DNA from: Octopus sinensis
Taxonomy: Eukaryota
Direction of reading: 5' to 3'
Assembly: GCF_006345805.1 (NCBI RefSeq)
Contig: NW_021825906.1
Coordinates: 1 to 13,995, forward strand
DNA length: 13,995 bases
Part shown: in pieces, positions 8,340 to 9,898 of the stretch
Numbering within the stretch: position 1 is the first letter of the stretch
Layout of the letters: the number at the start of each line of letters is the position of its first letter
The notes under the pieces: generated by a model
Told to the model about the DNA's origin: nothing
The model's input: the letters and a program-made list of their open reading frames with translations, nothing else
Database searches by the model: none
Program-made: the position numbers and the translations under genes

Positions 8340-8621
8340 TGTTTGTGCATATATGTATATGTATGTATATGTATATGTATGTATTCTTTTATTCTTTTCT
8401 TTGTTTCAGTCATTTGACTGCGGCGATGCTGAAAGCAACGCCTTTAGTAGAAAGAATCGACTCCAGAACTTATTCTTTGTAAACCTAGCACTTATTCTAT
8501 CTGTCACTTTTGCCGAACCGCTACGTTACGGGGACTTAAACACACCAACATGGGTTGGCAAGATATTGTGTGTCGATACAGATGCACAAACATATACATA
8601 CATACATACACACATACATGC
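8340..8621 (-). mobile_element. SINE 3' half, copy A (left arm of inverted pair)
   Basis: Homologous to 9587-9898 (inverted) and 12983-13291 (direct). Has an A-rich tail GAATAAAAGAATA on the minus strand and is truncated at an internal (CATA)n tract. Confidence 0.85.
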
Positions 8622-9380
8622 GTTAATTGGTTACTCAAAATCCGTTTCCACTGCATTCTGCGAAAGTACATTTATATGCGCGGAGGCATCTCGAGAGAAG
8701 TTCAGAAATTCTGTCATTGATCTTCTCGTGATTTCACAGAATAGACAGGGATACCTCGGAGCAGAGACAACATCTCCTGGAAATTATATGGTATTGTCTT
8801 GCGTACAATACCATGCACCAGTTTATGTTTTATTTCATTTTATCCTCCTTCACTCGCCGTACAAAATCTGCCAAAGATGTTGAATGTCTATTATTGATTG
8901 TTTTAAAGCTGGCAACATGATTACGATAACGATTCTTAAAAGAATCAGTCGTCTGTCCAATGTAAGCATAAGCCCCCACCCCACCCTTGTGAGCACGGTA
9001 CATCTATATACAAGATTTGTACTCATACGATATATACGTATGAATGCCTAATCTCTTACTGTCAAGAGTCCCAGATAAACCAAGTTCAGAACAAGAAGTG
9101 TAAATAAGGGCAGCGGCATCAAAGACCCTTATGCAACAAATATCAACTTCCCAAATGTATCAGTTAAGTGAAAATTCAACATCAAATGGCGATGTCCCAG
9201 CAGGCTCACAGCTCATGAGCTGAAATCGGTTGAAATTCAATTCAATTCAATATATATAAATATGCATACATGCATATATATATATATATATACTCCACAT
9301 ACATATACATATACACAAACACAGACCACAAAAATATATATACATATATATATAATATATATAATATATATATATATATA

Positions 9381-9539
9381 GGTCCGGGTTGAGTCGGGGT
9401 AACCACAGTAAATAAGGTACTCAATACATAGCAGAGTAAATTAATTTATTTTATAGAAGGAGCTTCTACAGGACTAGAACTGTTTCATTCAATGAATGAA
9501 ACAGTTCTAGTCCTGTAGAAGCTCCTTCTATAAAATTAA

Positions 9540-9542
<3 letters not shown>
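9381..9542 (-). mobile_element. Short element inserted in (TA)n, possibly a Penelope-like terminal repeat with an inverted partial copy
   Basis: A 162-bp complex-sequence island with (TA)n on both sides. It contains the 89-bp palindrome, and the minus strand carries GAAAC-AGTTCTA-GTC followed by AATAAA. The class assignment is inference. Confidence 0.4.
9448..9536. repeat. Perfect inverted repeat, 44-bp arms, 1-nt centre
   Basis: Checked base by base: 9448-9491 is the exact reverse complement of 9493-9536, with centre A9492. Confidence 0.98.
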
Positions 9543-9586
<44 letters not shown>

Positions 9587-9588
<2 letters not shown>

Positions 9589-9898
9589 GCATGTATGTAT
9601 GTATGTATGTATGTACATGTATGTATGTATGTATGTATGTATGTATATGCTTGTGCATGTGAGTTTGTCGCCACACCATACCTTGGCAACCGACGCTGGT
9701 TTGTTTAAGTCCCAATAACGTAGCAGTTCGGCAAAACAGTCTGATAGAATAAGTACTAGGTTTATAAAGAATAAGTTCTGGAGTCGATTCTTTCTACTAA
9801 AGGCGTTGCTTTCAGCATCGCCGCAGTCAAATGACTGAAACAAAGAAAAGAATAAAAGAATACATACATATACATACATATACATATATGCACAAACA
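9587..9898 (+). mobile_element. SINE 3' half, copy B (right arm of inverted pair)
   Basis: Reverse complement aligns with copy A over its whole length and ends in AAAGAAAAGAATAAAAGAATA plus a (TACA) microsatellite. Confidence 0.85.

What the first reader, a model, noticed from the sequence alone, without database searches (positions are those of the whole stretch)
8340..9898. Inverted SINE pair with a sharp identity step, suggesting a gene-conversion or template-switch tract
8340-8478 and 9766-9898 are identical as reverse complements except for one 6-bp microsatellite indel, including the flanking TATG repeat beyond the SINE tail. Copy C (12983 onward) differs from both at about 20 positions in about 97 bp of this block. 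Directly inside the boundary (8479 vs 9765) identity drops to about 82% (about 17 mismatches in about 97 bp), although A and B still share some variants against C (AAACCTAG, CTACGTTA, GGACTTAAA). Independent insertions cannot easily explain a shared flank plus a step change. Inference: an old inverted pair whose outer ends were recently homogenised. The ~965-bp spacer may also be invertible.
Basis: partly seen in the sequence, partly recalled or inferred. Interest (0 to 1): 0.7.

Follow-up and report, generated by a model that had tools for sequence, protein, structure and literature searches.

The report
Inverted octopus SINE pair, partly homogenised
Two old, decayed copies of an octopus short interspersed repeat face each other about 1.3 kb apart, and one end of each has been overwritten by the other, which is an ordinary case of DNA copy-correction between neighbouring repeats.

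Summary
Window 8340-8478 equals the reverse complement of 9766-9898: 0 mismatches in 133 aligned bases and one 6-bp microsatellite indel. Just inside that block the arms differ at 17 of 97 bases (Fisher P = 2e-7).

The window is octopus DNA. The orthologous locus of the Octopus vulgaris reference assembly differs by 0.94% in unique sequence. It has the same two arms, the same identical block and flank, the same step position, the same 6-bp indel and the same spacer orientation. So this is not an assembly or polishing artefact, and the homogenisation predates the split of the two genomes.

The shared block carries about 12 derived changes against four other copies of the repeat. It also runs 35-41 bp past the point where the repeat ends in a third copy. 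It is therefore an old sequence copied from arm to arm, not a young subfamily.

Best explanation: non-allelic gene conversion, or a template-switch equivalent, between the arms of an old inverted pair. That pair probably arose as an inverted duplicate of one 5'-truncated copy.

New and unexplained: arm B of the window carries 9 private substitutions within 66 bp (9677-9742), which sharpen the step.

This is a new example of a known process. Interest is low to moderate.

The parts
8340..8380 (-). Arm A, flank part of the identical block. It is an imperfect ATAC/ATAT microsatellite plus GCACAAACA in sense orientation, and it holds the extra 6-bp unit.
   Evidence: Identical to the reverse complement of 9864-9898 apart from the 6-bp indel. 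It lies beyond the 3' end that A, B and C share. The O. vulgaris locus L005 has the same sequence and the same indel.
8381..8478 (-). Arm A, the 3' 98 nt of the repeat (SINE part of the identical block).
   Evidence: 0 mismatches against 9766-9863. It shares 11 substitutions and 1 insertion with arm B against the majority of four other copies. It shows 0 substitutions against O. vulgaris.
8479..8578 (-). Arm A, inner block (the 5' part of the repeat body).
   Evidence: It differs from arm B at 17 of 97 positions in the window and 10 of 97 in O. vulgaris. It shows 0 substitutions between the two genomes. O. vulgaris has a 22-bp tandem duplication here.
8579..8625 (-). Arm A, internal microsatellite and junction motif (..TATATGTTTGTGCATCTG). 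This is the inner end of the arm, and no 5' head of the repeat lies beyond it.
   Evidence: Alignment to the head of full-length copies scores no better than shuffled sequence.
8626..9240 (.). Unique part of the spacer. It contains a decayed retroelement-derived reading frame on the minus strand, at about 8640-9010, with 3 in-frame stops.
   Evidence: Six-frame translation. One relative, P0128, has 59% identity. The family has 1855 representatives. One relative carries an N-terminal reverse-transcriptase domain. The window's fragment has no Pfam match.
9241..9440 (.). Spacer: TA/CA-rich microsatellites (9241-9380) followed by 60 bp of unique sequence.
   Evidence: From 9381 onward there is no counterpart in the O. 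vulgaris locus.
9441..9543 (.). Near-perfect palindrome with 51-nt arms and a 1-nt centre, present in the window only.
   Evidence: The DNA hairpin energy is -49.7 kcal/mol, z = -16. It is absent from L005 and the other loci.
9544..9668 (+). Arm B, (TA)n and (TATG)n microsatellites and junction motif (..TATATGCTTGTGCATGTG). This is the inner end of the arm, and no 5' head lies beyond it.
9669..9765 (+). Arm B, inner block. It contains a cluster of 9 window-private substitutions at 9677, 9686, 9694, 9696, 9701, 9715, 9737, 9740 and 9742.
   Evidence: 11 of 106 differences from O. vulgaris in 9660-9765 against a 0.94% background, P = 6e-9. It is the most divergent 100-bp stretch of the window.
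9766..9863 (+). Arm B, the 3' 98 nt of the repeat (SINE part of the identical block).
   Evidence: One substitution is private to O. vulgaris arm B.
9864..9898 (+). Arm B, flank part of the identical block. It runs on into a degenerate CA/TA-rich tract (9899-9930).
12982..13290 (-). Copy C of the same repeat, with part of the 5' head and an internal (CA)n. It served as a comparison copy and outgroup.
   Evidence: Its O. vulgaris orthologue is 99% identical.

Best explanation
The locus holds two old, 5'-truncated copies of an abundant octopus short interspersed repeat in head-to-head inverted orientation, with about 1 kb between the arms. A tract of 133-139 bp at their outer, 3' ends was copied non-reciprocally from one arm to the other. 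The tract comprises the last 98 nt of the repeat plus 35-41 nt of adjoining flank. Copying would have occurred by intrachromosomal homologous repair, that is non-allelic gene conversion, or equivalently by a strand that switched template during repair or replication.

The transfer happened before the two sampled genomes separated, but long after the arms began to diverge.

The pair itself most likely began as an inverted DNA duplication of one already decayed copy together with its 3' flank. The outer edge of the identical block would then be the edge of that duplication, and the conversion tract simply ran to the end of the homology.

Shown: the structure, the step, its presence in a second genome, the old age of the shared sequence, and the extension into flank.

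Inferred: the mechanism, the direction, and the duplication origin of the pair. There is a weak hint that B was the donor, because the block's CA-rich end continues into B's flank and not into A's.
For: (1) The block is identical (0 of 133) and the inner block differs at 17 of 97.

(2) The O. vulgaris reference locus L005 was assembled independently from Nanopore reads (PMC10700109). It has both arms, the same step position, the same flank and the same 6-bp arm difference. Its arms show 1 of 133 outer versus 10 of 97 inner differences, P = 9e-4.

(3) The shared block is old. Both arms share 11 substitutions and 1 insertion against the majority of four other copies, about 13%. That is similar to the decay of the inner blocks. 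If the outer block had diverged like the inner one, the probability of no difference in 133 bp would be at most 5e-7.

(4) Identity continues 35-41 nt beyond the 3' end common to copies A, B and C, then stops with no homology beyond.

(5) The relative ages fit. Inner-block divergence is 0.11-0.20 after Jukes-Cantor correction, which is 12-21 times the 0.94% divergence between the two genomes. No arm difference in the block is shared by both genomes, which bounds the interval between transfer and split at about 2.4 times that divergence (3/133, arithmetic).

(6) Several features fit one duplicated copy. Both arms lack the 5' head and start at the same internal microsatellite. They share a junction motif that copies C to F lack. 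They also share 7 derived states in the inner block.

(7) A tract of about 140 bp between repeats 1.3 kb apart lies within what is reported for Alu-Alu conversion. That process acts within about 10 kb and is stronger at shorter distance (PMC8230782).
Against: No genome with the unconverted state was available. The O. bimaculoides assembly has a gap of Ns over exactly this region. So the event is inferred from pattern, not seen before and after, and donor and recipient are not established.

If the arms were independent insertions, a classical conversion tract should not extend into non-homologous flank. The explanation therefore leans on either the duplication origin or a template-switch variant, and neither is shown.

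Shared derived states in the inner block could be subfamily markers rather than shared ancestry. Only 7 other copies or fragments of the repeat, in 112 kb, could be compared.

The identity of the window's genome is unknown. If it and L005 are two haplotypes of one species, 'before the split' means only before their coalescence.
Confidence: 0.72

Rival explanations
1. The arms are two independent insertions of the repeat, and one replication or repair template switch did the rest. A nascent strand entered the other arm through the 80-90% similar repeat body. It copied outward through the tail and 35-41 nt of foreign flank, then returned by microhomology. On this view there was no earlier inverted duplication.
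For: The outer boundary is abrupt, with no homology beyond it, which a microhomology return would produce. The block's CA-rich end is continuous with B's flank and not with A's. The same spacer holds a 103-bp perfect palindrome and self-complementary (TA)n tracts, so fold-back and switch-prone DNA is present locally. The repeat is dense enough here, three copies in 14 kb, for chance inverted neighbours.
Against: Both arms are truncated at the same internal microsatellite. They share a junction motif and 7 inner-block derived states that the other copies lack, which one duplicated copy explains more simply. Described short template-switch mutations are typically smaller and closer together (my own knowledge of Loytynoja and Goldman 2017, not checked here). 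No informative microhomology can be read at the junction because the recipient's original sequence is gone.
Confidence: 0.2
2. The structure is an assembly or polishing artefact, with one arm's end written over the other by mis-mapped reads or a chimeric read.
For: Both assemblies come from long noisy reads with short-read polishing. This is documented for O. vulgaris, which used NextDenovo plus HyPo, and repeats are where such errors occur.
Against: Two different genomes differ at 109 substitutions and many indels over the locus. Both show the same block, boundary, flank and 6-bp arm difference. The copied flank has no homologue in the other arm's neighbourhood that could attract mis-mapped reads.
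Confidence: 0.02
3. The block is the terminal inverted repeat of a mobile or composite element spanning 8340-9898, such as a foldback or long-TIR DNA transposon. Alternatively it is a young repeat subfamily whose source gene transduced its 3' flank.
For: The inverted termini are perfect with sharp outer edges. The spacer contains transposon-derived sequence.
Against: There is no target-site duplication at the outer edges (..GTAAA| versus |CACAA..). No other copy of the block or its diagnostic strings occurs in 112 kb of octopus DNA. The inner parts of the arms are 10-17% diverged, so the arms are not copies of one recent insertion. The spacer reading frame is a decayed fragment of a retroelement, not a transposase.
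Confidence: 0.04
4. No transfer occurred. The outer block has been kept unchanged in both arms by purifying selection since the duplication, for example as a perfect double-stranded RNA stem, while the inner block drifted.
For: The block shows 0-1 changes in either genome, and arm A shows none at all over 300 bp. Inverted repeat pairs can be transcribed into hairpins (PMC5398296, listed and not read).
Against: It would require every one of 133 bases in both arms to be constrained, including a degenerate microsatellite. The stem itself tolerates a 6-bp indel. The block shows ordinary decay, about 13%, from the repeat consensus. Arm A's inner block is equally unchanged between the genomes, so low recent change is not specific to the block. 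There is no expression evidence.
Confidence: 0.02

Closest known systems
Non-allelic gene conversion between neighbouring Alu or other SINE copies in primates
   Same: A short tract, tens to a few hundred bp, of one copy is replaced by the sequence of a nearby paralogous copy. This creates mosaic elements and distorts divergence-based ages. The effect is strongest for copies within a few kb (PMC8230782; PMC6598467, listed).
   Different: Here the partners are inverted and only 1.3 kb apart. The tract includes 35-41 nt of non-repeat flank and ends exactly where homology ends. The host is a cephalopod, and the unconverted state was not observed.
Arm-to-arm gene conversion in genomic palindromes, such as the human and ape Y-chromosome palindromes (my own knowledge of Rozen et al. 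2003, not checked here)
   Same: Inverted arms around a unique spacer are kept identical by intrachromosomal conversion, and the identity is shared across related genomes.
   Different: The scale differs: 0.14 kb of identity in 0.28-kb arms, against tens of kb to Mb. Only part of the arm is homogenised. The arms carry no genes, and ongoing conversion cannot be shown because only 0-1 changes have occurred since the split.
Short template-switch mutations that create or perfect inverted repeats (my own knowledge of Loytynoja and Goldman 2017, not checked here; the related survey PMC5829575 was listed and not read)
   Same: One event copies the reverse complement of nearby sequence, giving a perfect inverted repeat with sharp ends and no need for flanking homology.
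   Different: Those events are usually tens of bp over short distances. Here 133-139 bp were copied across about 1.3 kb, with entry through a homologous repeat.
Unstable inverted Alu pairs (my own knowledge of Lobachev et al. 2000 and Stenger et al. 2001, not checked here)
   Same: Closely spaced inverted SINE copies form hairpins or cruciforms and stimulate breaks and recombination. The window's locus also shows local structural turnover: a palindrome-bearing segment, a 22-bp duplication and a substitution cluster.
   Different: Instability there was measured experimentally. Here it is inferred from two genomes only.

Membership tests
Non-allelic gene conversion between paralogous repeats | A tract of much higher identity between two paralogues, bounded by lower identity | tested here: met
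   0 of 133 versus 17 of 97 in the window (P = 1.7e-7), and 1 of 133 versus 10 of 97 in O. vulgaris (P = 9e-4).
Non-allelic gene conversion between paralogous repeats | The tract carries copy-specific, non-consensus mutations in both partners, so the identity is not due to youth | tested here: met
   Both arms share 11 substitutions and 1 insertion against the majority of four other copies.
Non-allelic gene conversion between paralogous repeats | An orthologous locus in an outgroup shows the unconverted state, giving a before-and-after comparison and the direction | tested here: inconclusive
   O. vulgaris already has the converted state. O. bimaculoides has an N-gap over the region.
Non-allelic gene conversion between paralogous repeats | Homology on both sides of the tract | tested here: not met
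   There is homology on the inner side only. The outer end coincides with the end of all similarity. This is compatible with conversion only if the tract ran to the edge of an older duplication.
Short template-switch mutation | The new sequence equals the reverse complement of a nearby template, with sharp ends and no flanking homology required | tested here: met
Short template-switch mutation | The ancestral sequence of the recipient is known, so that one event explains a cluster of changes | not testable with these tools
   No genome with the pre-event state was available.
tRNA-derived SINE (octopus family) | A short dispersed repeat in many diverged copies, with a defined 3' end and tail repeats | tested here: met
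   Three copies lie in the window, and 7 further copies or fragments lie in O. vulgaris, O. sinensis and O. bimaculoides loci at 69-86% identity. The tail consists of AAAAGANT units.
tRNA-derived SINE (octopus family) | A 5' tRNA-related head with Pol III A and B boxes | tested here: not met
   Neither arm retains the 5' head seen in copies C, E and F. ARAGORN and Rfam find no tRNA-like gene in the window. Both arms are therefore 5'-truncated copies, and the tRNA origin of the family itself was not tested.
tRNA-derived SINE (octopus family) | Target-site duplications flanking each insertion | tested here: inconclusive
   None could be recognised. The 5' ends lie in microsatellites and the 3' flank is inside the copied block.
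DNA transposon or foldback element with terminal inverted repeats | A target-site duplication at the outer ends and further copies elsewhere | tested here: not met
   The flanks ..GTAAA| and |CACAA.. do not match. The block occurs only in the two arms in 112 kb of octopus DNA. A whole-genome search was not possible.
Invertible DNA segment | Both orientations of the spacer are found among genomes or reads | tested here: not met
   The spacer is collinear in the window and in the O. vulgaris locus. Only two genomes were compared and no reads were available.

The most novel reading that the evidence does not exclude
The pair is a small palindrome that is still exchanging sequence and breaking. 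On this reading, three things are footprints of repeated hairpin-provoked breaks repaired from the other arm or by error-prone synthesis: the 139-bp arm-to-arm transfer, the burst of 9 substitutions in 66 bp of arm B in one lineage, and the lineage-specific palindrome and 22-bp duplication. If this is common among the very many closely spaced inverted repeat copies of octopus genomes, it would bias repeat-age landscapes. It would also keep generating long perfect double-stranded RNA stems, the kind of substrate that RNA-editing enzymes act on, next to neural genes such as this neuropeptide-type receptor.
Probability: 0.12. Interest if true: 0.55.

Novelty: new member of a known kind. Interest (0 to 1): 0.3.

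Why it matters
On its own this is one locus showing a process well documented for primate Alu elements and for large palindromes. It has three uses.

It is a clean worked example in a cephalopod, with a second genome confirming it.

It warns that divergence-from-consensus or copy-to-copy identity can misdate repeats in these repeat-dense genomes.

It points to a cheap genome-wide test: do inverted neighbouring copies of this repeat show identity steps more often than direct or distant pairs?

The substitution cluster in arm B would be of wider interest if real, as a natural case of clustered mutation at an inverted repeat. It could equally be a local consensus error.

Tried and rejected
- Public DNA collections: an exact 27-mer of the repeat core found nothing in the metagenome or viral contig collections, so genome-wide copies could not be collected there.
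- Protein route to other copies: the 209-aa reading frame running through arm A had no relatives, so repeat-derived ORFs are not in the protein collection.
- O. bimaculoides orthologue as outgroup: it was fetched (L004) but has Ns over exactly this region.
- tRNA and Rfam scans: no tRNA-like gene was found. The only Rfam matches were sub-threshold and driven by microsatellites or the palindrome.
- Residual homology outside the arms, or between the spacer ends, that would reveal a larger old inverted duplication: none above shuffled controls.
- 5' head of the repeat upstream of either arm: not detectable. A visual resemblance between the right arm of the palindrome and the head was not significant, and I dropped it.
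- The recurring 11-mer TGTTTGTGCAT, found at the outer end of the block and in the 5' junction of both arms: I considered it a possible switch point, but its order relative to the microsatellites does not fit a simple inverted copy. I treat it as microsatellite-derived.
- A-to-B conversion in O. vulgaris, or mis-polishing of L005 with arm-A reads, as the cause of the arm-B differences: disfavoured. The 9 sites alternate, down to adjacent bases, with sites where arm B keeps its own state, and any read or tract covering one would cover the other.
- Transition/transversion spectrum of the cluster: not different from background.
- Pfam on the spacer frame: no family. Only an indirect link to reverse transcriptase through one relative.
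Full report
**What the window is.** The window is AT-rich, microsatellite-laden animal DNA. Its one long reading frame (5652-7076, minus strand) encodes a single-exon somatostatin/allatostatin-C-type receptor. The 90%-identity cluster of the best hit holds four proteins:
- the window's own protein,
- the Octopus bimaculoides orthologue,
- a 195-aa product from assembly GCA_951406725.2,
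- a Logan contig protein.

GCA_951406725 is the O. vulgaris reference. It was built from Nanopore reads with NextDenovo and polished with HyPo using Illumina and Nanopore reads (PMC10700109). So the window comes from an octopus of the O. vulgaris group.

Its exact source is not established. It differs from the O. vulgaris locus by 0.94% in unique sequence. O. sinensis and O. vulgaris differ by 3.6% at a control locus measured the same way.

**The observation.**
- 8340-8478 is the reverse complement of 9766-9898, with 0 mismatches in 133 aligned bases and one 6-bp microsatellite unit extra in arm A.
- The first arm difference is at 8479/9765. In the well-aligned inner block (A 8479-8575, B 9669-9765) there are 17 differences in 97 bases. 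The step has Fisher P = 1.7e-7.
- A third copy, C (12982-13290, minus strand), differs from the shared block by 15 substitutions and 4 one-base indels in about 95 bp.

**Anatomy.** In sense orientation, B lies on the plus strand and A and C on the minus strand.
- All three copies end ...AAGAATAAAAGAATAC, at A 8381, B 9863 and C 12982. After that point C goes its own way.
- A and B stay identical for another 41 and 35 nt. This stretch is an imperfect ATAC/ATAT microsatellite followed by GCACAAACA. All similarity then stops, and the flanks beyond align no better than shuffled sequence.
- The identical block is therefore 98 nt of repeat plus 35-41 nt of flank.
- Full-length copies from other loci have an ~85-nt 5' head, an internal TA/TG microsatellite, the body, and a tail of AAAAGANT units.
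- Copy C keeps part of the head. Neither A nor B has any detectable head. Both arms begin at the internal microsatellite and share a junction motif there (TATATG[T/C]TTGTGCAT[C/G]TG) that the other copies lack.

**The spacer.** It contains four kinds of sequence.
- A decayed reading frame on the minus strand (about 8640-9010, three in-frame stops). One relative has 59% identity. The family has 1855 representatives, and one member carries an N-terminal reverse-transcriptase domain. I read it as a retroelement fragment. The window's fragment itself has no Pfam match.
- TA/CA microsatellites.
- 60 bp of unique sequence.
- A 103-bp near-perfect palindrome at 9441-9543.

**The second genome.** The look-up of encoding contigs returned the orthologous loci of O. 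bimaculoides (L004) and O. vulgaris (L005). L004 has a run of Ns over exactly this region and says nothing.

L005 is collinear with the window and contains both arms. In a four-way alignment the O. vulgaris arms show:
- the same identical block,
- the same flank,
- the same first arm difference (TTTAC versus TTTAT),
- the same 6-bp arm difference.

Arm differences in L005 are 1 of 133 in the outer block and 10 of 97 in the inner block (P = 9e-4). The spacer has the same orientation.

Three things follow. The structure is not an assembly or polishing artefact. The homogenisation predates the separation of the two genomes. No inversion of the spacer is seen between them.

**Age of the shared sequence.** I took four other copies as outgroups: C, one from O. 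bimaculoides, one from O. sinensis and one from O. vulgaris. Against their majority, the SINE part of the block carries 11 substitutions and 1 insertion shared by both arms in both genomes, about 13%. That matches the decay of the inner blocks.

So the identity is not the identity of young insertions. An old, mutated sequence is present twice.

The other seven copies or fragments are 69-85% identical, and the diagnostic strings occur only in the arms. The sample is small. It shows no sign of an abundant subfamily with these variants, and no subfamily would explain the shared flank combined with diverged inner blocks.

**Relative timing.**
- Inner-block divergence is 0.11 (O. vulgaris) to 0.20 (window) after Jukes-Cantor correction. 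That is 12-21 times the 0.94% divergence between the genomes.
- If the outer block had diverged like the inner one, the chance of no difference in 133 bases would be at most 5e-7.
- No substitution in the block distinguishes the arms in both genomes. The interval between the transfer and the split is therefore bounded at roughly 2.4 times the genome divergence (3/133, arithmetic).
- The 6-bp indel is shared, so it arose in that interval or during the transfer itself.

**Mechanism.** The best reading is a non-reciprocal transfer of about 139 bp from one arm to the other by intrachromosomal homologous repair. I cannot separate classical conversion from a template switch.

A classical tract needs homology on both sides, and the outer end has none. 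This fits conversion only if the arms began as an inverted duplicate of one truncated copy plus its 3' flank, so that the tract ran to the edge of the old homology. Three observations favour that origin:
- both arms are truncated at the same point,
- they share the junction motif,
- they share 7 derived states in the inner block.

These observations do not exclude two independent insertions of one subfamily followed by a switch that copied foreign flank. I give about 0.72 to an arm-to-arm transfer in an old pair that probably began as an inverted duplicate, and about 0.2 to the rival of two independent insertions joined by a single template switch.

There is a weak hint on direction. The CA-rich end of the block runs on into B's CA/TA-rich flank, whereas A's flank is unrelated. 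That suggests B was the source.

**A second, unexplained feature.** Between the two genomes, substitutions per usable bases are as follows:

| Segment | Substitutions / usable bases |
|---|---|
| Arm A (outer plus inner block) | 0 / 229 |
| Outer block of arm B | 1 / 133 |
| Copy C | 1 / 190 |
| Receptor ORF | 2 / 1358 |
| Inner block of arm B (9660-9765) | 11 / 106 |

The arm-B inner block has P = 6e-9 against the 0.94% background and is the most divergent 100-bp stretch of the whole window.

Nine of the 11 differences are private to the window, at 9677, 9686, 9694, 9696, 9701, 9715, 9737, 9740 and 9742. At all nine, O. vulgaris arm B equals arm A. Against the outgroups, five window states are derived, two equal the consensus and two are a third state.

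The nine sites alternate, down to adjacent bases, with eight sites where arm B of both genomes differs from arm A. One contiguous A-to-B conversion in O. vulgaris would have changed those eight sites too. So would polishing of L005 with arm-A reads.

What remains is:
- a burst of point changes in the window's lineage,
- several very short conversion patches,
- a local consensus error in the window.

The substitution spectrum is unremarkable. The ancestral step was probably about 10%, not about 18%.

**Other local turnover.**
- The 9375-9545 segment, which includes the palindrome, has no counterpart in O. vulgaris. That genome has about 75 bp of unrelated sequence there.
- O. vulgaris arm A has a 22-bp tandem duplication between the repeat's two internal AGAATAAGT motifs, immediately inside the step.

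Together with the (TA)n tracts, this suggests a break-prone neighbourhood. Two genomes are not enough to call it a hotspot.

**Comparison with what is known.** The closest known process is non-allelic gene conversion between neighbouring SINE copies. It is best documented for Alu, where it acts within about 10 kb and more strongly at short distance (PMC8230782). At a much larger scale there is arm-to-arm conversion in palindromes, and short template-switch mutations are the mechanistic alternative.

This locus differs in the following ways. The partners are inverted and very close. The tract includes non-repeat flank and ends at the edge of homology. The host is a cephalopod.

It is a new example of a known kind of event, not a new kind. 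Interest is low to moderate. The useful follow-up is a genome-wide count of identity steps in close inverted pairs, and a check of the arm-B cluster in raw reads.

Noticed in passing
window 9441-9543 (segment 9375-9545): A near-perfect 103-bp palindrome with 51-nt arms and a 1-nt centre (DNA hairpin -49.7 kcal/mol, z = -16), flanked by (TA)n. The whole segment has no counterpart in the O. vulgaris orthologous locus, which has about 75 bp of unrelated unique sequence there.
   Followed up: partly
window 9677-9742 (arm B inner block): Nine substitutions private to the window lie within 66 bp, against a 0.94% background divergence from O. vulgaris (P = 6e-9 for 9660-9765). They are interleaved with sites where arm B of both genomes differs from arm A. 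The cause is unresolved.
   Followed up: yes
L005 7872-7893 (orthologue of window about 8479-8500): O. vulgaris arm A has a 22-bp tandem duplication between the repeat's two internal AGAATAAGT motifs, directly inside the identity step. The window lacks it.
   Followed up: partly
window 5652-7076 (minus strand): An intact single-exon somatostatin/allatostatin-C-type receptor gene lies 1.26 kb from arm A. The O. vulgaris locus encodes the identical 443-aa protein, although only a 195-aa product is on record for that assembly.
   Followed up: partly
L004 7196-9135: The O. bimaculoides chromosome-scale assembly has a gap of Ns exactly where the inverted pair would lie, so this region failed to assemble there.
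   Followed up: no
window 11000-11250: This is the second most divergent stretch against O. vulgaris, with 11 substitutions in 251 bp and no indels. It lies in the most GC-rich part of the window, and what it is was not examined.
   Followed up: no
window 830-3350: Very long (AAT)n/(ATT)n trinucleotide arrays are arranged as mutually inverted blocks, for example 1781-1943 against 3164-3326 at 90-94% complementarity.
   Followed up: no
L006 20100-20480 and L007 5960-6300: Two full-length copies of the repeat, one in O. sinensis and one in O. vulgaris at a different locus, share flanking sequence with each other. They therefore belong to a larger repeated unit and are not fully independent as outgroups.
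   Followed up: partly
L006 versus L007 (control locus) compared with window versus L005: O. sinensis and O. vulgaris differ by 3.6% at the control locus, whereas the window differs from O. vulgaris by only 0.94%. Either divergence varies fourfold between loci, or the window is not from the O. sinensis assembly.
   Followed up: partly
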